Positions 3,616-24,641 of a stretch of 64,000 nucleotides of DNA are shown here, piece after piece. The stretch spans positions 62,001 through 126,000 of IMG/VR virus record IMGVR_UViG_3300020473_001965; one strand, written 5' to 3'. How positions within the stretch are numbered: position 1 is the first letter of the stretch; each line of letters starts with the position of its first letter. The position numbers and the translations under genes are program-made. The notes under the pieces were generated by a model. It was not told where the DNA came from. It was given only the letters and a program-made list of their open reading frames with translations, and did not search any database.

Positions 3616-6600
3616 TTAACTATTTTTGAGAAGGTCTTGAATCATTTCTCTCACAACCGATTCATCTCTACGATCCGGGTCGTTGCTTCCCTGGAAGTCT
3701 AGGCTCATTTGTCTGTCTAGGTCGATTGTAACTCTGTCATTAGCTTGCTGTAATTCTACCGCTGTTCTACCCAGGGCCCAGCCAATTGTGAATATTCCTG
3801 CCCTGATATGCGTCAAGCCCTGAGATTTGCCTCGATCTTTTCCGTATCTTGCTGCAAGAACAGGACGGAATTCATCATCTTCAGGAACGTCGCCCTTTAC
3901 TTTAATCTGTCCAGAACCCTTTAGAGAAAACGAGTATACTGGCTGAATACCACTGAACATATCTACCTGGGCTTGATTAGATTCTTTGGATAGTTGTATC
4001 ACACCCTTTGTGGCAATACAAAGGTCGCAGCTTTCTGGGCTTGATTCACTATCACTTAAAGCTGGCCCATAAATTGCGCGTGCTTTTAAGCTGTCATCGT
4101 TAATCTCTCTATAGACTGCAGTTGTCAGCCTTCCTTCGGCAGTGTAGTCTATCAGATCCTGAATAAAAGACTGAATCTCAGGATGCGTATCTAGACCGGA
4201 TCTACTAGAAATTCCTGACCATTGTTGTTGCTCTGATCCTTTGCTTGCATACTTTAGAGATATAAATGCTACCTGATTTCCTTCATAGTCTACCAACGCA
4301 GCATCGGCTTTTGGTGTCTTTGGTATTGACACACAAGAAACAACCCCGCGGACTGTCTTGTCCCGCCCTAAGTACAGAGAGATTCCCTTGGTAGGGTCGT
4401 AGTCATCATCATTCGACTCATCGCTTATTGCTTTCTGAATTGCTGCATTAATCTGATCAATTTGTATATCTTCTTTTTCGGTACCTGAATCACTATCTTT
4501 GCCCGTAACAATACTCTTGCTTATCCGCGAGAGGGGTGTTCCCGAATCTTGAAATATTTTAACTAGTTCCTTGTATTCATCAGACGCTACAGGATCCTCA
4601 AGGTCAGACATCTTCTCACAGAGGCTTGATGCTTTCGTTCTTTGAGCGGGTGTCATATCAAGCAGTACTTCTCCACCGTCTTTGATTAATCTTACTTTTA
4701 ACTCTGGGTTCTGCAACATCTCAGCGAACTTCTTTAAATACTTTGGTCGCTTTGCAATTCCCCCTCTTCCTGATGCCCTTGTTTCTGAAAGCATTTTCTT
4801 TTTCCTCGTAGTTATTTCTTTAATAATTGTCTTCAATAAGAGTTTGGCTGACTCTGTCAGAGTTAGCCCAACATCTTGGAGATTTTGTGCTATCATTGCC
4901 CACAGCCACGTCTTTCCTTCTCTTTCATCTTCTACTTCATCTTCTGGAACGTATTCCTTGTAAGTCTGCCAGTTTGAATTAACCCAGCGAAGTATTTCAT
5001 TCCTAGAAACGGGCGGTAAGTCTACACCCTTTTGAACAACAATATTGCTGTCTCTCATAAACTTTTGAATCACTTCGTCTCTAGCGGAAGGAGTCGTACT
5101 AAAATGAGTTGTACTTGGATGTGCAGGCTCTTGAGAGAGTTGACGCTTTACATCAGCTGCAGCAAAAGCTGTAGCTGCTCCATCACTGGAAAAGATGTCT
5201 ATCTCTCTTGTGAGGTCTTTACTATCTTTCCCTAGAAATACCTGGGGTGGTCTATTTCCATCAAAATGCCTAAACTTTACGTATGCTATTTCTTTACCTT
5301 CAAGTGCTTCAGTACCTTGAAGACTGTAGTACACTGAAGGGTTCACGTCATTTCGCAAAGGTAGTTCTACCACTTTCATCTCAGGGATCCCGGGATATAC
5401 TACCGATTCTATTGAGACTAGCTGGCTCACTGAGTTTGCATCGGCACGAGCAGCTTTCGACCACGGTACAGTAAATTTTATATACGCAGTCTTTCTATCG
5501 TTTTCTTCTGCACCCAGCTCTACACCAAAGAGTTTTCTGGTAGCATCTGTTACTATTGCATCAACATATCCCATCTCATCCAGTAGCTTCATAAATTCAT
5601 CGTGATTGTCTCTAAACATTTGGAAGTAAGCTTGTTGAGCCTCTTGAGCTTGAGGATCTTTTCCCGGTGTCTTCATGTTGCCAAAGCCACTCTCCATGTA
5701 GTGTGTGTAAACTACACTAGTCTTCCCAGTCTCAAGCAAATGAGGTGCACCCTTCGGTGTCACTCTAAGGTATGAAGATCCTTGTCCTAAGTCTTTTGGT
5801 GAGACGCCAGATCTGAACTCTACACCGTAGCCTGTCCTTGCTGGATTCTTCGGATGCGGATCTGGCACGTGAACGTGTGGCCCACCTATCTTTGAACGCT
5901 CCCACAGATTGATAAACCTCTGATCAGTGATATCTACGCCGAGGTTTGACATTTCTCGGCTTAGCTCAAAAACAGGAACTTCGAATTCAGGTACACCTTT
6001 CTTGCCAAGCACCGGTTGACCAGATGAGTCTGTCTTAAATGTCAAGGTGGTTGTCCCTAATGTAATATTTGATGAAGCCTCTGGAGAAGTTGTAATAAAC
6101 GTTTTAGTCTTACCACCTGATGTTTGAACATCGACGATTTTGTCACGATATTTCTTGTCAGCTGTCTCTTCATTCAAGATGTGTTTCTCAACAAAGCGCT
6201 CGATTGCTCGATAGTAAATGTCTGTGGATATGTAGCCTGATAGATATTGGCCCTTTGCCAGTTTTCCTCTTCCCAAGCCCCCCACTCTATGATCATCATT
6301 TAACTTTACGTGAATGTCTACATTGGTCAGTTCAACGTCTACCTCATCATTGCCAGGCTTGGGTTCTGAGCCTGTACCTGGCAACAACTCTACTTCTCCA
6401 AAATTTGCAATAGCTTCTGAAGCCAGGGACTTCATAGCGCTCACAATGTTTTTTAGCTTTAATAAATTCGCAGCTGTGTCACCAGACTCACCCTCAGTAC
6501 TGACAGCGCTTTCAGCTCTTTCAAAAGCAGCGCTATATCTTCGATCTTTCTTGCACTCTTCCCATTCACCTTCCGTTAAATCTCCCGGGGATTTCGCTGC

Positions 6601-6765
6601 AAAGTAAACAGCCCACTCAGCGATAAAAGACGCGTGGCCATTCGCTGAGCCGGTAAATGGACTCCCTGAAACAGAAGAACCCAAGCCCGCTAAAGGCTTG
6701 GGTGACTCCGAAAGAATTGATTGTATTCTTTCTCGCAACGTTTTTTCATGATTACGTGACAACAT
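3616..6765 (-). CDS. 1049-aa multi-module protein with a putative PD-(D/E)xK-like C-terminal domain and leader-like helices
   Basis: KTPKADAALVD...FISLK...QQWSG; helices LRERIQSILSE, LTESAKLLLKTIIKE, DESVVREMIQD. Confidence 0.6.
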   Translation of the reverse strand: MLSRNHEKTLRERIQSILSESPKPLAGLGSSVSGSPFTGSANGHASFIAEWAVYFAAKSPGDLTEGEWEECKKDRRYSAAFERAESAVSTEGESGDTAANLLKLKNIVSAMKSLASEAIANFGEVELLPGTGSEPKPGNDEVDVELTNVDIHVKLNDDHRVGGLGRGKLAKGQYLSGYISTDIYYRAIERFVEKHILNEETADKKYRDKIVDVQTSGGKTKTFITTSPEASSNITLGTTTLTFKTDSSGQPVLGKKGVPEFEVPVFELSREMSNLGVDITDQRFINLWERSKIGGPHVHVPDPHPKNPARTGYGVEFRSGVSPKDLGQGSSYLRVTPKGAPHLLETGKTSVVYTHYMESGFGNMKTPGKDPQAQEAQQAYFQMFRDNHDEFMKLLDEMGYVDAIVTDATRKLFGVELGAEENDRKTAYIKFTVPWSKAARADANSVSQLVSIESVVYPGIPEMKVVELPLRNDVNPSVYYSLQGTEALEGKEIAYVKFRHFDGNRPPQVFLGKDSKDLTREIDIFSSDGAATAFAAADVKRQLSQEPAHPSTTHFSTTPSARDEVIQKFMRDSNIVVQKGVDLPPVSRNEILRWVNSNWQTYKEYVPEDEVEDEREGKTWLWAMIAQNLQDVGLTLTESAKLLLKTIIKEITTRKKKMLSETRASGRGGIAKRPKYLKKFAEMLQNPELKVRLIKDGGEVLLDMTPAQRTKASSLCEKMSDLEDPVASDEYKELVKIFQDSGTPLSRISKSIVTGKDSDSGTEKEDIQIDQINAAIQKAISDESNDDDYDPTKGISLYLGRDKTVRGVVSCVSIPKTPKADAALVDYEGNQVAFISLKYASKGSEQQQWSGISSRSGLDTHPEIQSFIQDLIDYTAEGRLTTAVYREINDDSLKARAIYGPALSDSESSPESCDLCIATKGVIQLSKESNQAQVDMFSGIQPVYSFSLKGSGQIKVKGDVPEDDEFRPVLAARYGKDRGKSQGLTHIRAGIFTIGWALGRTAVELQQANDRVTIDLDRQMSLDFQGSNDPDRRDESVVREMIQDLLKNS

Positions 6766-6782
6766 ATCTACCCGATTATAAA

Positions 6783-6795
6783 CATAAATATCACG
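6783..6795 (-). promoter_or_regulatory. Class II (putative late) promoter motif CGTGATATTTATG
   Basis: Matches the recurrent CGTnATAWTTA motif, just upstream of the 1049-aa gene. Confidence 0.5.
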
Positions 6796-6806
6796 ATCGT
6801 ATTAAA

Positions 6807-6986
6807 TTAGCTGCTAGAAAAGAGAGAACATAGCTTTTTAAATTCGGAAGGCGTGCAGTTGACAACCTTATTGCCGTTCTTATTTAGCTGATAAAAAGTA
6901 TGGCCGGCGATTTTCGTTACAGACACGTCGAACGTATGTGTCTTGTTGTAACCCTTTACTTTTACAGACGCTAGTGTTTCAGTCAT
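6807..6986 (-). CDS. 59-aa hypothetical protein (below ORF-track cutoff)
   Basis: MTETLASVKVKGYNKTHTFDV...KLCSLFSSS*; fills the gap after the 6988 ORF. Confidence 0.5.
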   Translation of the reverse strand: MTETLASVKVKGYNKTHTFDVSVTKIAGHTFYQLNKNGNKVVNCTPSEFKKLCSLFSSS

Positions 6987-6987
6987 C

Positions 6988-7203
6988 TTAGATCCCGGGC
7001 ATGAGGCTTCGACTCATCTGAACCTCGTGCGGCTTGCTACTTTTGGCTCTTCGATCTTCAAGGACTTTCTGTGCTCGTGCGTCTGATTCTTTGGCCGATT
7101 CGTTATCTTCGCTGACAACGTACTCGAGATTTAGTTTTACACCATTTCTCTCTTGATAAATTTTGTAGATATACATTATTCTCCTCCCTTGCATTTTGGA
7201 CAT
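6988..7203 (-). CDS. Hypothetical protein
   Basis: ORF in operon; GGAGG RBS before MYIYKIY. Confidence 0.5.
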   Translation of the reverse strand: MSKMQGRRIMYIYKIYQERNGVKLNLEYVVSEDNESAKESDARAQKVLEDRRAKSSKPHEVQMSRSLMPGI

Positions 7204-11071: not shown

Positions 11072-11695
11072 TTAACTTTTTTGATATGGTGCGTTCAATA
11101 AGCTGTCTACAACATCCTGAAGGTGTACTTTGATCGCATCGTAAACAAGTGAGCGTGCTTCATCATGAAAGCTTGCCTCACCAGGCCCGCCTAAATCTTC
11201 AGCTGCAACCTGAAGGACCGGTATCATCGCATCGCGAAGTGCTGCCTTATTCTCTTCACCAAACAGCGGGGCAATTGCATCAGAGAGTGCTTGAGTGTGC
11301 TGCGCTCGCAAGACGCTGAGACCTCCTTCGGGCACAGCCATGTGGCTTATCTCTTCCTTAATAATCTGTCTAAGCTGTCGTCTTGTAATTTTGATTGTTG
11401 ACTCTGTGTATCTTTCAATCCTTTTTCCTGACGGTATGGACTCTGGTTCCATATCAGCCAGCGAGTCTAAACTATAAGGAATGTTTGCTCTGCTTCCTGG
11501 ACCTCCGGTAATCATGTCTAATATGTCGTCAAGCTCATCTTGATTATAGGCAATTTCAGATTGAGCCCTACCGTTTAAATCATATCCCACCACAATGGGA
11601 AATTCAGCATCAGCAATGTTCTTCCCAAGATTATGCCTTGGATGTGCCATTTCTTCTTCAATAATCTTTCTAAGCCGGGATTTTGTAATTTTCAT
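11072..11695 (-). CDS. Leader-tagged protein with two leader copies
   Basis: MKITKSRLRKIIEEE and internal IKITRRQLRQIIKEE. Confidence 0.75.
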   Translation of the reverse strand: MKITKSRLRKIIEEEMAHPRHNLGKNIADAEFPIVVGYDLNGRAQSEIAYNQDELDDILDMITGGPGSRANIPYSLDSLADMEPESIPSGKRIERYTESTIKITRRQLRQIIKEEISHMAVPEGGLSVLRAQHTQALSDAIAPLFGEENKAALRDAMIPVLQVAAEDLGGPGEASFHDEARSLVYDAIKVHLQDVVDSLLNAPYQKS

Positions 11696-15556: not shown

Positions 15557-16627
15557 TTAATCATACATTGGGGGTGTGTGTCTGACTGGTGCCCGCTTCT
15601 TGCGTGGCTTGGCACCATAAGCATAAAGCACATCTTCAATTTGTTTTAGAGTAAATCCTGCACGTTGTGCTTGATCGGCTGTAATATTACCATAGTCGGT
15701 GCCGCCGTCCTTGTATTCAATATTAATGTTACTTGGCTCGCCACCCTTGCGACGGACCTGATACGTTATCTTCTTGATATCATCCTTAGCTATGTAATCC
15801 ATTGTCAGTGAATTGCCGATAACTTCTCTTTCTCCTGGGTTTGGGTCCGCTTGATGCGCTGCATCCATGTCGGCACCACGCTGGTTCATCCAGGCAGACT
15901 CAAGATCTCTCATGAACTTACGTACTTTGTCAAGATCCCAGTTATCTGGAACGACAGCATCTTGAGAAAAAGACCCGTCGTTCCGACCTACCTTGTTTAC
16001 CCATCCGTTCATTGCGTCAAGGTCTAAGTCAAGATTCTCGTAGTTAACCATTTCATCAGCAAGCGCACCTTGAATGTCATTCGTAAGTGCATAGTTTGCA
16101 ACCCTGTTCATGGTATCCAGATCTTCATAAGGGTTTACCATAATTGGAAGCATTTTGCGCTCGCTGAGTATGGCTTCGCGTATAATTCTTCTAAGCTGTG
16201 ACTTCTTGATTCTCATCTTTCCCTCTGTGGCTGGAGGTAAATCATAGTCTGGTAGACCATGATCACCTGATTCTTGCCACTCACCTTTTCCATTCCAAAA
16301 TCCTGATGGATCTGCATCGGCAGGTGGTGGTCGTTCATGCCAGCCTTCTTGTTTAATGAGTGCTAATAGTTCGCTGTCATGCATCCACTCAGTTTTAGCA
16401 CCAGGATTTGCTCCGAAAACAACAAGAACGTTTGCACCCGGAGGGACTGGATCACCAAGGTCTATTGCGGCACTCACTGTCTCAGGCGAAGCTATGTCAT
16501 TGATATATCGAACTTCTCCGTCACGCGTGAATGTAACATTCCGCCAAGCAAAATGATCTTCAACCCAAGTGGGCACAGATACCACCTCTTGAATTATTCG
16601 CCTGAGCTGTGACCTCTTGATTCTCAC
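15557..16627 (-). CDS. Leader-tagged protein, two leader copies
   Basis: MRIKRSQLRRIIQEV; internal MRIKKSQLRRIIREAILSE. Confidence 0.75.
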   Translation of the reverse strand: MRIKRSQLRRIIQEVVSVPTWVEDHFAWRNVTFTRDGEVRYINDIASPETVSAAIDLGDPVPPGANVLVVFGANPGAKTEWMHDSELLALIKQEGWHERPPPADADPSGFWNGKGEWQESGDHGLPDYDLPPATEGKMRIKKSQLRRIIREAILSERKMLPIMVNPYEDLDTMNRVANYALTNDIQGALADEMVNYENLDLDLDAMNGWVNKVGRNDGSFSQDAVVPDNWDLDKVRKFMRDLESAWMNQRGADMDAAHQADPNPGEREVIGNSLTMDYIAKDDIKKITYQVRRKGGEPSNINIEYKDGGTDYGNITADQAQRAGFTLKQIEDVLYAYGAKPRKKRAPVRHTPPMYD

Positions 16628-16770
16628 TGTGATAAACTCCCTATGAATCCCATTACCATTACTACAACAAATACTGTTAATGGTATCATTGCTGCTGCCA
16701 TCATACCTAAATCTTTTGGTGTGACTCCTCGATGATCCATCCAGTCTTTGAGTTTTTTTATTGGCTTCAT
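16624..16770 (-). CDS. 48-aa membrane protein (below ORF-track cutoff)
   Basis: MKPIKKLKDW...MIPLTVFVVVMVMGFIG; 4-nt overlaps on both sides. Confidence 0.55.
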   Translation of the reverse strand: MKPIKKLKDWMDHRGVTPKDLGMMAAAMIPLTVFVVVMVMGFIGSLSQ

Positions 16771-16892
16771 TTCTTCTTGTCCTTGTTTTTCTTGACAGGG
16801 ACGGGCTGAAGCGCTGGCTGCAATCCCAGCAAAGCTGCTAGATCATCAATAAATTCGCTCACCTTGGCTCGAATGTCATCAAAGATTTTCAT
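16767..16892 (-). CDS. 41-aa hypothetical protein (below ORF-track cutoff)
   Basis: MKIFDDIRAKVSEFIDDLAALLGLQPALQPVPVKKNKDKKK*. Confidence 0.5.
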   Translation of the reverse strand: MKIFDDIRAKVSEFIDDLAALLGLQPALQPVPVKKNKDKKK

Positions 16893-16897
16893 TTTAT

Positions 16898-17296
16898 CTA
16901 GCCTGTTGTTGTTGCGTACACACTGTAAATGTCGTACTGATCTAAATCACCGATTTGCTGTATAAGCGCAGGGTTGCGGCCGCGCTCTATCGCGGATTGG
17001 ACGTTTCCTCTCACTCCTGGATCAGAAAGGTCAAGCAGTGTTACTGCCCTAAACATGTCTTCGGGTGTGATTGATGGTGCACCCTTTGGCACAAATTCCA
17101 ACCAAGCTCTGTCCCGAGGATGAATTCTTCTTCCATCGAATGTGGTAGTACCGCCTGTTCCAACCTTCCCGTGATAAGGGCCTGAGAGAGCGTCATCCAA
17201 ATAAGAATCGGATTCACTGAGGCCTTTTCTTTCACTCAGAAATCTTGAGACTTCCTCTTTTATAATCTGCTGAATTCTTGATTTAGCTATTTTCAT
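16898..17296 (-). CDS. Leader-tagged protein
   Basis: MKIAKSRIQQIIKEEVSRFLSE. Confidence 0.75.
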   Translation of the reverse strand: MKIAKSRIQQIIKEEVSRFLSERKGLSESDSYLDDALSGPYHGKVGTGGTTTFDGRRIHPRDRAWLEFVPKGAPSITPEDMFRAVTLLDLSDPGVRGNVQSAIERGRNPALIQQIGDLDQYDIYSVYATTTG

Positions 17297-17580
17297 TTTA
17301 AGGCCTTGGCGTCGTCGAGCTGACCTCGCTCGACTGTTGCTGTTAGATCCTCAATGAATTCATATGCAGCCGCTCGGCGATCGCCGGGATCGCGTATCGA
17401 CATAAGAGCATTGATCACATCTTTCATAGCAGTACCCAAATCGTCTTCTTCGTACTCATACTCCTTGAGCATTTCTTGACGCTCAGCATTTGAGCCAAAC
17501 TCTTTCTTGCTGGTCTGCCTGTTAAGTTTTGCAGCTTCCTCAGCAACAATTCTTTTAAGTTGTTTCTTGGTAATTTTCAT
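17293..17580 (-). CDS. Leader-tagged protein
   Basis: MKITKKQLKRIVAEE...MLKE. Confidence 0.75.
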   Translation of the reverse strand: MKITKKQLKRIVAEEAAKLNRQTSKKEFGSNAERQEMLKEYEYEEDDLGTAMKDVINALMSIRDPGDRRAAAYEFIEDLTATVERGQLDDAKALK

Positions 17581-17589
17581 TTTTATCCT

Positions 17590-17850
17590 CTACAATCTAA
17601 TGTTTCTTAGTCTTCTGTCCCTGACTATTGCTGCAGGTAGTTCTCCTAGCTCGAGATCTCTCTTTACTTGTGTCAGCTGTTCGGGGAAGAGTCGACCCTT
17701 GTCGACTTCGAACTCTACTTGACGCAGGAGTTCTGCCTTTTGTCGCTCAATCTCAGCGTTTTCACTAAGAGCATTAAGCACTTGCAGCTCTTCTCTTACT
17801 ATTTGACGAAGCTTTTTCTCTGTTAGTTTCACTATCTTCCTCGCTGCCAA
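17590..17850 (-). CDS. Leader-tagged protein
   Basis: VKLTEKKLRQIVREELQVLNALSE. Confidence 0.7.
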   Translation of the reverse strand: MAARKIVKLTEKKLRQIVREELQVLNALSENAEIERQKAELLRQVEFEVDKGRLFPEQLTQVKRDLELGELPAAIVRDRRLRNIRL

Positions 17851-18083
17851 GAATAGGCGAACCCATGCTTGCTAAAAAATGCGTTGAGCACCTCATCCAA
17901 CTCGGTTTCAAAGCCTACCGGAAGCAGACCGTGCTTGAGATCAGATTCAATGTTTACACTCAAGGTGTGCATTCCGCCGGCTGAGGGCCACATTCTAGCA
18001 GATGCTGTGCTGTTCGATTCGTTTAAAATCTTTTTCTGCTCTTCTTGGATGATTCTTCTGAGTTGTGACTTTTTGATTTTCAT
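17832..18083 (-). CDS. Leader-tagged protein
   Basis: MKIKKSQLRRIIQEEQKKILNE. Confidence 0.75.
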   Translation of the reverse strand: MKIKKSQLRRIIQEEQKKILNESNSTASARMWPSAGGMHTLSVNIESDLKHGLLPVGFETELDEVLNAFFSKHGFAYSWQRGR

Positions 18084-18089
18084 GATATC

Positions 18090-18290
18090 CTACTTTGCTG
18101 TTTGCGCTTGAGACAGCATCGCTGCTAGACGGTCTAGCTTTTTTCCTATGTCTGTTTCTTCGCCTACATCGTCAACTAGGCTAAACAGTTCCTGTCTTAC
18201 CTTTTCTATTATTTCATTCTTTTTTGACTCTGCCAACCGATCCTTCTCTTCTTGGATGATTCTTCTGAGTTGTGACTTCTTGATTCTCAT
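18090..18290 (-). CDS. Leader-tagged protein
   Basis: MRIKKSQLRRIIQEEKDRLAE; start re-called to 18290. Confidence 0.75.
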   Translation of the reverse strand: MRIKKSQLRRIIQEEKDRLAESKKNEIIEKVRQELFSLVDDVGEETDIGKKLDRLAAMLSQAQTAK

Positions 18291-18571
18291 TTTCTCTCCC
18301 AAGCTCCTCTTGAAGCTAAGTTTACTAGGGCAGGGATCACTTTGCCCCTCACGTACTCAAGTGCGTCTTGATAAACGTCATCGCCGTACAAGCCCGTGTC
18401 AAAGTTCTTCTGATCACTCTTGACGGCGCCGTCTTCAATCATCACTTCAACAATCTCATCGACGAGCTGTGCTACGCTGTGGTAGTCGGGACCAGCTTCG
18501 ACGCGAGCTTCCTGAAGGTTGGCAGCTTCTTCTTTGATTATCTGTCTAAGTTGTTTCTTTGTAATTTTCAT
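18287..18571 (-). CDS. Leader-tagged protein
   Basis: MKITKKQLRQIIKEEAANLQE. Confidence 0.75.
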   Translation of the reverse strand: MKITKKQLRQIIKEEAANLQEARVEAGPDYHSVAQLVDEIVEVMIEDGAVKSDQKNFDTGLYGDDVYQDALEYVRGKVIPALVNLASRGAWERK

Positions 18572-18572
18572 T

Positions 18573-18845
18573 TTAAGCTCTCGGTACCGACTTTAAGAAA
18601 TTGTGCACTAACTTGAATGCCTTTTTTAATTCTAGAAATTTCTGAGGTGTCAGCTCACCCGCATCGCGTTGCCTCATTGCTAGCGCAGGAAGGACACTGC
18701 TAAGATCTACAGCTACATCGGACGGGTGTTTCTCGTGCGGCAAGTGGTCGTCCTCGATGTCGCCGGGGCGCGTGTACGCATCAGCAATCAATCTAGCCTG
18801 CTCTTCTTGGATGATTCTTCTAAGTTGTGACTTCTTGATCTTCAT
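18573..18845 (-). CDS. Leader-tagged protein
   Basis: MKIKKSQLRRIIQEEQARLI; start re-called to 18845. Confidence 0.75.
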   Translation of the reverse strand: MKIKKSQLRRIIQEEQARLIADAYTRPGDIEDDHLPHEKHPSDVAVDLSSVLPALAMRQRDAGELTPQKFLELKKAFKLVHNFLKSVPRA

Positions 18846-18853
18846 TTTTCTTC

Positions 18854-18982
18854 CTAGCAACAACTACAAGAGTCGCAACTGCACGTGCAGCATTCGCAGC
18901 ACTTTGATTCTTTCTTGGGCGGACATGTTTCACCGCAATCTTCATCGTGGTGATTCGTGATCTTTTGATCTAAATTTCCCAT
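18854..18982 (-). CDS. 42-aa Cys-rich metallothionein-like protein (not in ORF track)
   Basis: MGNLDQKITNHHDEDCGETCPPKKESKCCECCTCSCDSCSCC*; 11 Cys, purine-rich RBS (AGAGGAAGAGAAAG), fills the gap before the next start. Confidence 0.7.
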   Translation of the reverse strand: MGNLDQKITNHHDEDCGETCPPKKESKCCECCTCSCDSCSCC

Positions 18983-19088
18983 CTTTCTCTTCCTCTACAG
19001 TTAATTGACCGGAGCCCGACGAAAATGGGAGATGTTCCGGTCTCATTTTATTTTAGCGTGGGCTCAGACCTACCAATCCCACGTGATT

Positions 19089-19100
19089 ATAAATATGACG
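19089..19100 (-). promoter_or_regulatory. Class II promoter motif CGTCATATTTAT heading the leader array
   Basis: Matches CGTnATAWTTA. Confidence 0.5.
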
Positions 19101-19205
19101 CAGCAATACTATCGTACCACCCGGGAGAGTAAAAAGTTTCGAACCAGCAAAGAATTTTGGAGGAATCGATACGTCGATTCTGAGAAATTCTGTTGCAACT
19201 CTATC

Positions 19206-19397
19206 TTAATCGCTTGCGTTGTCTTCGAGTTCTTCGTCGTCTGATGATTCATGTCGTGACTCCGGGACGTCATCAAATGCATCTTCTTCAAACATTAGTT
19301 CCTCCAACGCTTTCTTTCTTTCCTCGTCTGCACGATCAGGTAAATTAGACTTTGGGCAACCCATCAACACTAAAGACAGTAAAAACAATAACCTCAT
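19206..19397 (-). CDS. Small acidic lipoprotein
   Basis: MRLLFLLSLVLMGC lipobox; GGAG RBS. Confidence 0.6.
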   Translation of the reverse strand: MRLLFLLSLVLMGCPKSNLPDRADEERKKALEELMFEEDAFDDVPESRHESSDDEELEDNASD

Positions 19398-19545
19398 TGT
19401 ATATCTCCTTGACTTTATACATATCATCTTTGTTGAGGTTATTCTAGACGCCCTGTGTGATTCTCTGTTGTTAACTAAATATCGATACCAAGAAGGTATC
19501 ATATGACTTAACAAAGACGTCTGTGATTCATCTGTGTCCCCCTGA

Positions 19546-23530: not shown

Positions 23531-23752
23531 CTATAGATCTACACGATAAACATCGCAAACGCTTGTATACTTGTCTATATACCCTTTCGATCCGTCGGGC
23601 CATAAAACTATCAAATACGCTTTATCCACACCGTTCAGATCAACACAATTTCTTTCTGCTACAACCAACCCTACTGTATCTTCGACAGCGCCTACGTCGT
23701 CTATTACATCTGGCTTGTAACGTACGAGATCACCTACATTGATTGATTCCAT
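23531..23752 (-). CDS. Small SH3-like protein
   Basis: NVGDLVRY...GLVV...VLWPDG. Confidence 0.55.
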   Translation of the reverse strand: MESINVGDLVRYKPDVIDDVGAVEDTVGLVVAERNCVDLNGVDKAYLIVLWPDGSKGYIDKYTSVCDVYRVDL

Positions 23753-24641
23753 ACATACTATATATGGATGTATATCGTTCGCCTCTATCACACAGCATTG
23801 TTACGACGATACCATCGGGCTGAGATTGCTGCACATATTTCTCAGCAGCCAAAACATTAGCACCTGAAGATATCCCTACTAGCAAGCCGTGCTTACTAGA
23901 CAATTCTATGGATTTCTTTATTGCCAGCTGCGTCTCTATTTTTATTTCTTGATGTATTGCTGATTTGTCTAATAGAAAATCGGCGCCGTCGTTTACACCC
24001 TGAATGCCGTGGGATTTGTTTCCCTCAGCCGGGCTCATCAAAACTATCTTAGTTGTCAATCCTGCATCGCAGAGATATTCTTGAACACCACGTATTGTCC
24101 CACCTGTGCCGGCTCCTGAGACAAATGCGCTCCATGATCCGTGAGGAATGACTTGTTTGTGTATCTCAGGTGCTGTCTGTGTTTTGTGACATTCTACGTT
24201 TAGTAAGTTTTCAAACTGCGACGGCGTCCAAAAATTGGGATTTGAAGAACATATCTCATCTCTTAGCTGAATGGCTGCTGCGAAATCGCTGGGGCCTACT
24301 TCAACTACTTTGGCGCCATACAGGCGCATCATTACTTTTCTCTCTTCACTCATATTTGACGGCATAACAATCAGAACATCTAGACCGAGAGAAGCGCCAA
24401 ACATAGACAGCGCGATGCCAGTGTTTCCAGATGTTGCTTCAACAAGCGTCGATTCAGAGTTTATCTTTCCAGAATTAATCGCTTCGTTTACAAGATATGA
24501 TATCATCCTATCTTTGACTGAACCTGAAGGGTTGTATGTCTCTAGTTTTGCATAGATCTTGTCTGTCAGCTTAACTAAGGGTGTGTTACCTACTAGGCTC
24601 TTTAAGCTCTGGTATTCTTGCGTCGTTTCTGTTGTTTTCAT
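23730..24641 (-). CDS. cysK: Cysteine synthase (PLP-dependent O-acetylserine sulfhydrylase family)
   Basis: GNTPLV, KLE.YNPSGSVKDR, EATSGNTG, GAGTGGT, GISSGAN, CDRGERY. Confidence 0.88.
   Translation of the reverse strand: MKTTETTQEYQSLKSLVGNTPLVKLTDKIYAKLETYNPSGSVKDRMISYLVNEAINSGKINSESTLVEATSGNTGIALSMFGASLGLDVLIVMPSNMSEERKVMMRLYGAKVVEVGPSDFAAAIQLRDEICSSNPNFWTPSQFENLLNVECHKTQTAPEIHKQVIPHGSWSAFVSGAGTGGTIRGVQEYLCDAGLTTKIVLMSPAEGNKSHGIQGVNDGADFLLDKSAIHQEIKIETQLAIKKSIELSSKHGLLVGISSGANVLAAEKYVQQSQPDGIVVTMLCDRGERYTSIYSMYGINQCR

What the first reader, a model, noticed from the sequence alone, without database searches (positions are those of the whole stretch)
18854..18982. Unannotated metallothionein-like miniprotein heading the cargo operon
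Seen: MGNLDQKITNHHDEDCGETCPPKKESKCCECCTCSCDSCSCC has 11 Cys and 2 His in 42 aa, no aromatic residues, CC/CxC spacing and a good RBS. It is the first ORF after the class II motif. Established: this composition typifies metallothioneins. Inference: phage-encoded metal or redox buffering, fitting with SOD and CysK in the same window.
Basis: partly seen in the sequence, partly recalled or inferred. Interest (0 to 1): 0.65.

Follow-up and report, generated by a model that had tools for sequence, protein, structure and literature searches.

The report
Tiny cysteine-rich phage peptide family
The 42-codon cysteine-rich reading frame is a real, conserved gene of a previously undescribed family of very small (14-42 residue) cysteine-packed peptides found only in uncultured marine T4-like phages. 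They look like miniature metallothioneins, but metal binding has not been shown.

Summary
The ORF exists as described, on the minus strand (18854-18982): 42 aa, 11 Cys, 2 His, no aromatic residue, and a GAGGA ribosome-binding site 8 nt upstream. It is not a chance frame. Degenerate DNA pattern scans recovered 24 distinct peptides at 38 loci in marine viral and metagenome contigs. All start with ATG, nearly all have a strong Shine-Dalgarno site, and all end soon after a shared core, C-K-C-C-E-C-C-x-C-x-C. Close pairs differ mostly at synonymous sites. Spacer residues are almost never hydrophobic.

Most members are only 14-22 aa; the window carries a rarer N-terminally extended form with extra His and Cys. 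The family has no match in Pfam, NCBIfam, PHROGs or PDB. It has one hit among 1.84 billion representative proteins and none in 596 Gb of bacterial and archaeal genomes.

The best reading is a phage-specific metal-thiolate (metallothionein-like) micro-peptide. This rests on composition only; it belongs to no known metallothionein family by sequence.

"Heading the cargo operon" holds only for this lineage. Elsewhere the mini-gene sits between unrelated genes, and in one deep clade it ends 5-9 nt before a phage tmRNA. The link to SOD is weak (40 kb away). CysK lies within 5 kb in three lineages but is absent from three complete carrier genomes.

The parts
18854..18982 (-). Mini-gene: 42 codons plus TAG. 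This is the N-terminally extended member of the C-K-C-C-E-C-C-x-C-x-C peptide family; here the first Cys of the core is Ser.
18991..18995 (-). Shine-Dalgarno-like GAGGA, 8 nt before the ATG.
   Evidence: Nearly all relatives have AGGAG/GGAGG-type sites 5-9 nt before their ATG.
19031..19073 (-). Conserved 43-nt upstream element of unknown role. It is kept in L129 and partly in L128/L141, and it appears in metatranscriptome contigs with unlike flanks.
   Evidence: no Rfam match
19086..19106 (-). Promoter-like TTGCT-N10-TATAAT in the 223-nt gap upstream of the mini-gene. Consensus match only.
   Evidence: 2 matches in the window against 0.24 expected
18573..18845 (-). First downstream ORF (90 aa), starting 8 nt after the mini-gene stop codon. 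Its N-terminus carries the shared M-K-I-x-K-x-Q-L-R-R-I-I-x-E-E type motif.
15557..18571 (-). Rest of the tandem array of small ORFs with the same N-terminal motif. These are putative capsid-targeted 'cargo' proteins; this is inferred, not shown.
   Evidence: T4-type prohead protease at G000:207383-207802. One array segment is replaced in another strain (joint 18089/18256).
23730..24641 (-). Context only: cysteine synthase (CysK-like) gene 4.7 kb upstream in the direction of transcription.
   Evidence: also near the mini-gene in L123 and G002

Best explanation
The ORF is a translated, single-copy phage gene. It encodes a member of a phage-specific family of ultra-small cysteine-rich peptides with the core C-K-C-C-E-C-C-x-C-x-C, usually followed by one to three more Cys. 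The most likely mode of action is metal-thiolate cluster formation: the 8-11 thiolates wrap soft metal ions (Cu(I), Zn(II) or Cd(II)), as a metallothionein does. In the long form of this window, two His and a C-x-x-x-C pair in the N-terminal extension would add ligands. During infection this would buffer, sequester or deliver trace metal, and could also soak up oxidants.

Shown: the gene is real, is conserved at the peptide level, is restricted to marine T4-like phage contigs, and has metallothionein-like composition.

Inferred: metal binding, which metal, and the benefit to the phage.
For: 1. Family and coding evidence.
- A K-CC-E-CC-x-C-x-C-D pattern scan of metagenomes gave 13 loci, and all 13 are tiny ATG-started ORFs with a Shine-Dalgarno-type site that end 1-6 codons after the motif.
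- A C-K-CC-E-CC scan of viral contigs gave 23 such ORFs. The other 38 hits are off-frame matches without an ATG, which serve as an internal control.
- In total there are 24 distinct peptides at 38 loci.

2. Purifying selection on the peptide.
- Window versus L129: 6 synonymous and 3 non-synonymous differences (pN/pS about 0.1).
- L128/L136 and L138/L139: 5 synonymous and 0 non-synonymous each.
- The cytidylyltransferase-linked group: 1-3 synonymous and 0 non-synonymous.
- TGC/TGT, AAA/AAG, GAA/GAG and GAT/GAC alternate freely at the conserved positions.

3. Composition typical of metallothioneins.
- 43% Cys overall, arranged as CC and CxC motifs.
- Spacers are almost only K, E, D, N, S and T. 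Only 1 of 137 variable non-Cys residues in the short forms is hydrophobic or aromatic, against 31% in the phage's own long ORFs.
- The long forms conserve T-N-H-H-D-E-x-C-x-E-x-C-x-P-K, which adds His and Cys ligands.

4. The gene is single-copy in the own genome and in five large carrier genomes.

5. Contigs from a metatranscriptome library (X18) cover 18845-19049. This is weak evidence of transcription.

6. AlphaFold gives no fold without metal (pLDDT 48.6), as expected for an apo-thionein.
Against: - There is no experimental or computational evidence of metal binding.
- No hit to any metallothionein model, even at E<=10, nor to PDB chains.
- No metal-transport or metal-sensing gene is a consistent neighbour.
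- K, E and six of the Cys were demanded by my search patterns, so their invariance is partly by ascertainment.
- A 14-residue chain with 8 Cys may be too short to wrap a classical M(II)3-4 cluster on its own.
- The recurrent position just upstream of a tmRNA suggests some other logic that I cannot explain.
Confidence: 0.5

Rival explanations
1. The peptide is made and acts through its thiols or a compact Cys-knot, but not as a metal buffer. It could be a redox or oxidant scavenger, or a small inhibitor that binds a host protein, with any metal playing only a structural part.
For: The evidence of peptide-level conservation is the same as for the main reading. The charged spacers K, E and D at fixed positions could form a recognition surface. 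Small early phage proteins often inhibit host factors (general knowledge).
Against: A peptide of 8 Cys in 14 residues with no hydrophobic residue has little to build a binding surface from, and the bacterial cytoplasm is reducing. No partner is suggested by any conserved neighbour.
Confidence: 0.25
2. The mini-cistron is mainly a regulatory upstream ORF. Translating 8-11 Cys codons gauges the supply of Cys-tRNA (reduced sulfur). By ribosome pausing or coupling, this tunes the gene or tmRNA that starts 0-14 nt downstream.
For: It lies 0-20 nt upstream of the next gene or RNA in most loci (94 nt in L163, 55 nt in L184) and has a strong Shine-Dalgarno site. In at least 6 loci its stop codon is 5-9 nt before the 5' end of a phage tmRNA. 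CysK is nearby in 3 lineages.
Against: There is no terminator or antiterminator after it (the spacers are too short). The downstream partners are unrelated to one another: motif ORFs, a cytidylyltransferase, an exonuclease and tmRNA. Tight spacing is normal in phage genomes. The spacer residues are under peptide-level constraint, with hydrophobic residues excluded, which a codon sensor does not need. RNAalifold finds no conserved pairing between the mini-ORF and the tmRNA.
Confidence: 0.12
3. The peptide is a precursor of a ribosomally made, post-translationally modified peptide (RiPP), for example a SCIFF/ranthipeptide-like product.
For: It has a Cys-rich C-terminus behind a variable N-terminus, and the long form is similar in size to SCIFF peptides.
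Against: There is no NCBIfam match. No radical-SAM or other maturase was seen: the window neighbours scanned gave no such Pfam match, and the named neighbours in the relatives are unrelated enzymes or unknowns. The short forms have only 1-6 residues before the core, too few for a leader.
Confidence: 0.03
4. It is not a gene but a chance open frame over a TGC/TGT-rich stretch of DNA.
For: It was not called as a gene in the protein collection. Loose Cys-pattern scans are flooded by (TGY)n simple repeats.
Against: The chance probability is 6e-8 per frame. There are 38 loci with ATG, a Shine-Dalgarno site and a short tail, an excess of synonymous change, and a contrast set of 38 off-frame hits that lack these features.
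Confidence: 0.02

Closest known systems
Metallothioneins: the polyphyletic class of small Cys-rich metal-thiolate proteins, for example fungal and ciliate Cu/Cd-thioneins and the CC-containing alpha-domain of vertebrate MT (comparison from general knowledge)
   Same: Very small size, 26-57% Cys, CC and CxC motifs, almost no aromatic or hydrophobic residues, spacers of K/E/D/N/S/T, and no fold predicted without metal.
   Different: No sequence match to any Pfam or NCBIfam metallothionein model or to PDB chains. The typical member is 14-22 aa, shorter than any metallothionein I know of. It is encoded only on phage contigs. Metal binding is untested.
Bacterial metallothioneins SmtA/BmtA (Pfam Metallothio_Pro) and mycobacterial MymT
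   Same: Small prokaryote-associated Cys-rich metal binders. The long form also carries His residues.
   Different: SmtA-type proteins have a zinc-finger-like fold with aromatic residues and a different Cys/His spacing. No HMM match. The pattern is absent from 596 Gb of bacterial and archaeal genomes.
Amino-acid attenuator leader peptides (hisL, trpL, pheL type)
   Same: A tiny ORF with a Shine-Dalgarno site, a run of codons for one amino acid, placed directly upstream of other genes.
   Different: No terminator or antiterminator. The downstream genes are unrelated to cysteine synthesis. Peptide-level constraint acts on the non-Cys positions.
T4 internal proteins with a conserved capsid-targeting sequence. 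Per PMC3012670, these are diverse proteins that share only that sequence.
   Same: In this window, and at L129, L130, L145 and L164, the mini-gene abuts a variable array of small ORFs that share only an N-terminal motif ending in I-x-E-E. The genome has a T4-type prohead protease.
   Different: The mini-peptide itself lacks the motif. Most family members are not next to such arrays. The targeting role of the motif is an inference.
Cys-rich C-terminal tails of actinomycete DUF5685 proteins
   Same: They contain the same CC-E-CC-x-C-x-C-D string.
   Different: They are tails of proteins of about 360 aa in GC-rich Streptosporangiales, not free-standing mini-genes. This is most likely convergent, and their function is also unknown.

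Membership tests
Metallothionein (operational class) | Low molecular mass (under 10 kDa) | tested here: met
   42 aa here and 14-42 aa across the family.
Metallothionein (operational class) | High Cys content in CC, CxC and CxxC-type motifs | tested here: met
   11 of 42 residues here and 43% across 24 peptides. The core is CC-x-CC-x-C-x-C.
Metallothionein (operational class) | Few or no aromatic or hydrophobic residues | tested here: met
   No F/W/Y in the window peptide. LIVFMWY make up 6 of 502 residues family-wide, against 31% in the phage's long ORFs.
Metallothionein (operational class) | High metal content; metal-thiolate clusters seen by spectroscopy or mass spectrometry | not testable with these tools
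   Needs peptide chemistry. AlphaFold without metal gives pLDDT 48.6, which says nothing either way.
Established metallothionein sequence families (Pfam/NCBIfam, including bacterial SmtA type) | Significant match to a family model or to a solved metallothionein chain | tested here: not met
   No Pfam family at E<=10 for 9 members or at 0.1. No NCBIfam match at E<=1. The PDB profile search gave nothing at E<=10. HMMER's bias filters may hide weak Cys-driven matches.
Attenuator leader peptide | Terminator/antiterminator structure between the leader ORF and the regulated gene | tested here: not met
   No terminator-like site after the ORF. The distance to the next gene or tmRNA is 0-20 nt in most loci.
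Attenuator leader peptide | Downstream operon makes or handles the sensed amino acid | tested here: not met
   Downstream are motif ORFs, a cytidylyltransferase, an exonuclease or tmRNA. CysK is nearby in 3 lineages but never directly downstream.
SCIFF/ranthipeptide or other RiPP precursor | Family model match and an adjacent maturase (for example radical SAM) | tested here: not met
   No NCBIfam match. The window neighbours have no such Pfam domain, and the named neighbours in the relatives are unrelated enzymes or unknowns; most of those neighbours were not scanned against Pfam.
T4-type capsid-targeted internal ('cargo') protein | Carries the N-terminal targeting/cleavage motif shared by the array | tested here: not met
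   A motif scan of the whole genome finds 9 ORFs at window 16213-18842 but not the mini-ORF.

The most novel reading that the evidence does not exclude
The mini-cistron is a portable ribosome-level sensor rather than, or as well as, a metal binder. Translating its 8-11 Cys codons reports the host's Cys-tRNA or reduced-sulfur status. Because its stop codon lies within a ribosome footprint of the following start codon or tmRNA 5' end, it could gate expression of the next gene or maturation of the phage tmRNA. That would link sulfur supply, trans-translation and phage gene expression in marine hosts.
Probability: 0.08. Interest if true: 0.85.

Novelty: new variant of a known kind. Interest (0 to 1): 0.62.

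Why it matters
If the peptides bind metal, they would be the smallest metallothionein-like molecules known and the first such family specific to phages. They recur in uncultured marine T4-like phages, so infection might alter Zn, Cd or Cu handling in abundant ocean bacteria.

The result also shows that conserved genes of 14-22 codons are missed by gene callers. Only one cluster of this family exists among 1.84 billion representative proteins. Even so, such genes can be recovered by degenerate DNA patterns combined with start-codon, ribosome-binding-site and stop-codon criteria.

The recurrent placement just before a phage tmRNA is a new and testable oddity.

Tried and rejected
- tBLASTn against isolated phages gave no match. 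This is uninformative because the low-complexity filter is on.
- The word-based protein search found nothing, not even the ORF itself.
- The search for related loci could not use the peptide (too short). With alignment A2 it found 95 pattern matches, but the tblastn confirmation rejected all of them.
- Pfam, PHROGs, NCBIfam, a PDB profile search and the ESM Atlas gave nothing.
- Rfam found no RNA family in or upstream of the ORF.
- The AlphaFold2 model has no confident structure, so I did not run fold searches.
- I looked for a second Cys-rich ORF before the genome's own tmRNA. That position holds an unrelated 63-aa ORF.
- I scanned viral contigs for the upstream element and found only L128.
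- Conserved RNA pairing between the mini-ORF and tmRNA is not supported.
- HTVC008M and cyanophage Syn1 lack the mini-gene at the homologous gene junctions.
I redid the analysis by extracting the peptides from the stored loci.

Full report
**What is there**

The window is positions 62001-126000 of a 235,672-bp IMG/VR virus record that CheckV estimates as 87% complete. It is a tailed phage.
- It encodes a major head protein, portal, large terminase and a T4-type prohead protease.
- It also has GroEL, a helicase and a ligase, 8 tRNAs and one tmRNA.
- Its terminase is only 45% identical to the nearest isolate, Microcystis phage Mel-JY01, so the host is unknown.

The reported ORF is on the minus strand at 18854-18982. 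It has 42 codons, 11 Cys, 2 His and no aromatic residue. GAGGA lies 8 nt before the ATG, and an in-frame stop lies 4 codons upstream. It is the most Cys-rich ATG-started frame in the genome. The binomial chance of 11 TGY codons in 42 is 6e-8.

**Is it a gene?**

Standard searches were blank, so I back-translated the Cys core into degenerate DNA patterns.
- A specific pattern found one relative in viral contigs (L123), a 22-codon ORF with an AGGAGG site.
- A relaxed pattern added L128 among chance hits.
- The single metagenome scan gave 13 loci. Every one is a tiny ATG-started ORF with a Shine-Dalgarno-type site that stops 1-6 codons after the motif.
- The last viral scan gave 23 more. The other 38 hits lack an in-frame ATG and are off-frame matches inside other sequences, which makes a useful control.

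In all there are 24 distinct peptides at 38 loci, 14-42 aa long with 8-11 Cys each. Alignment A2 shows the core K-C-C-E-C-C-x-C-x-C-D-x-C. Most short forms have one more Cys before the K.

Close pairs differ mainly at synonymous sites.
- Window versus L129: 6 synonymous and 3 non-synonymous differences.
- L128/L136 and L138/L139: 5 and 0 each.
- The cytidylyltransferase-linked group: 1-3 and 0.

Both codons are used at every conserved position. Those changes would be non-synonymous in the other frames. Part of the invariance is imposed by my patterns. What the patterns did not impose is the following.
- ATG starts, Shine-Dalgarno sites and short tails.
- Additional Cys outside the pattern.
- The near-absence of hydrophobic spacer residues: 1 of 137, against 31% expected.

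Contigs from a metatranscriptome library cover 18845-19049, in the L129-like variant. This is only weak evidence of transcription, because DNA carry-over cannot be excluded.

**Distribution**

- A profile search of 1.84 billion representative proteins found a single 37-aa cluster, P0001. It sits on two marine contigs, again directly before ORFs with the N-terminal motif.
- The pattern is absent from 596 Gb of bacterial and archaeal genomes.
- A looser pattern there hit only unrelated frames and the Cys-rich tails of actinomycete DUF5685 proteins.
- The carrier contigs are marine. Their flanking genes resemble those of pelagimyophage HTVC008M and T4-like cyanophages at 40-48% identity, yet those isolates lack the mini-gene at the same junctions.
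- The own genome and each of five large carrier genomes hold exactly one copy.
- The window sequence itself occurs in marine metagenomes from several studies.

**Context**

In this window the mini-gene follows a 223-nt gap and precedes, by 8 nt, a run of at least 9 small ORFs that share only an N-terminal motif ending in I-I-x-E-E.

T4 internal proteins likewise share only a capsid-targeting sequence (PMC3012670), and this phage has a T4-type prohead protease. The mini-peptide itself lacks the motif.

The same adjacency holds for all long forms (L129, L130, L145) and for L164. Elsewhere the mini-gene is wedged, mostly with short gaps on both sides, in other places:
- before a cytidylyltransferase;
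- before a PD-(D/E)XK exonuclease;
- before assorted unknown ORFs.

In L132, L134, L138, L139, L205 (G004) and L182 (G002) its stop codon lies 5-9 nt before the 5' end of a one-piece phage tmRNA. In L123 and L140 the tmRNA is 0.5-1 kb further on. The own genome's tmRNA is 75 kb away and is preceded by an unrelated ORF. RNAalifold finds no conserved pairing between the mini-ORF and the tmRNA.

'Heads the operon' is therefore true here but is not a property of the family.

**Function**

The composition is that of a metallothionein: tiny, 26-57% Cys in CC and CxC motifs, hydrophilic spacers, no aromatics, and no fold without metal. The long form adds a conserved H-H and a C-x-x-x-C pair. I therefore take metal-thiolate binding as the most likely mechanism, with confidence about 0.5.

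It is not a member of any established metallothionein family by sequence. Which metal it binds, and why that helps the phage, are open questions.

The rivals are as follows.
- A thiol/redox or inhibitor peptide (0.25).
- A Cys-codon regulatory upstream ORF (0.12). This is disfavoured by the lack of any attenuator, by the unrelated downstream partners and by the peptide-level constraint on spacers.
- A RiPP precursor (0.03). There is no model match, no maturase was seen among the neighbours checked, and the leaders are too short.
- A chance frame (0.02).

The SOD is an Fe/Mn enzyme about 40 kb away. CysK lies within 5 kb in three lineages but is missing from three complete carrier genomes.

**Novelty and verdict**

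The core motif strings tested occur in no relevant paper of the library, and searches for phage metallothioneins found nothing relevant. The finding is real and, as far as these tools show, undescribed. It is a new phage-specific family of miniature metallothionein-like peptides, and the window carries an unusual extended member.

I rate it a new variant of a known kind. Interest is moderate to high, limited by the untested chemistry.

Noticed in passing
L132:4682-5040, L134:636-1056, L138:36-450, L139:2844-3258, L205:4042-4440; G002:C1:50188-50595: In a deep clade of carrier phages the Cys-rich mini-gene ends 5-9 nt before the 5' end of a one-piece phage tmRNA, so the mini-cistron lies in the tmRNA leader. 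No conserved RNA pairing between the two was found.
   Followed up: partly
window 19031-19073 (-), with 19086-19106 (-): A 43-nt element upstream of the mini-gene is kept in L129 and partly in L128/L141. It also turns up in metatranscriptome contigs with different flanks. It is unique in the own genome and has no Rfam match. It could be a promoter or leader cassette.
   Followed up: partly
window 15557-18845 (-); also ORF starts near 11695, 35415 and 58949: At least 9 tandem small ORFs, plus scattered others, share only an N-terminal M-K-I-x-K-x-Q-L-R-R-I-I-x-E-E type motif. The 45-nt coding piece of the motif recurs in many unrelated metagenome contigs. One array segment (18089-18256) is replaced by 263 other bases in another strain. 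Together with the T4-type prohead protease at G000:207383-207802, this resembles the hyperplastic internal-protein loci of T-even phages.
   Followed up: partly
L145:6124-6456 (+): One motif-bearing ORF directly after a long-form mini-gene carries a peptidoglycan-binding domain (PG_binding_1). This fits a protein that is delivered into the host envelope.
   Followed up: no
window 23730-24641 (-); L123 about 6100-7000; G002:C1:45613-46428: A cysteine synthase (CysK-like) gene lies within 5 kb of the mini-gene in three diverged lineages. In L123 it follows a PiT-like permease (my reading of the sequence, not checked against a family model) and the tmRNA. It is absent from three complete carrier genomes.
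   Followed up: partly
window 19206-19514 (-): The ORF upstream of the intergenic gap contains an internal Met followed by a lipoprotein-type signal (L-M-G-C lipobox). This suggests a small phage lipoprotein.
   Followed up: no
L148:277-1347, L151:4791-5891, L153, L154, L155, L157: DUF5685 proteins of Streptosporangiales (Herbidospora, Actinomadura, Spirillospora, Nonomuraea) end in long Cys/Asp-rich tails containing the same CC-E-CC-x-C-x-C-D string. Their function is unknown and the similarity is probably convergent.
   Followed up: partly
G000:C1:5354-5720 (-): The window's own phage encodes a one-piece tmRNA whose tag ends in R-L-A-A. It is preceded by a 63-aa basic ORF.
   Followed up: partly
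G000 about 29.6-31.4 kb, 59-60 kb and 38-46 kb (outside the window): Other short sequences recur 5-9 times in the genome. Examples are an ATG-AAA-GTC-GGT-GAT gene start and a TATTATTAGATAGTAAGGA-type intergenic motif.
   Followed up: no
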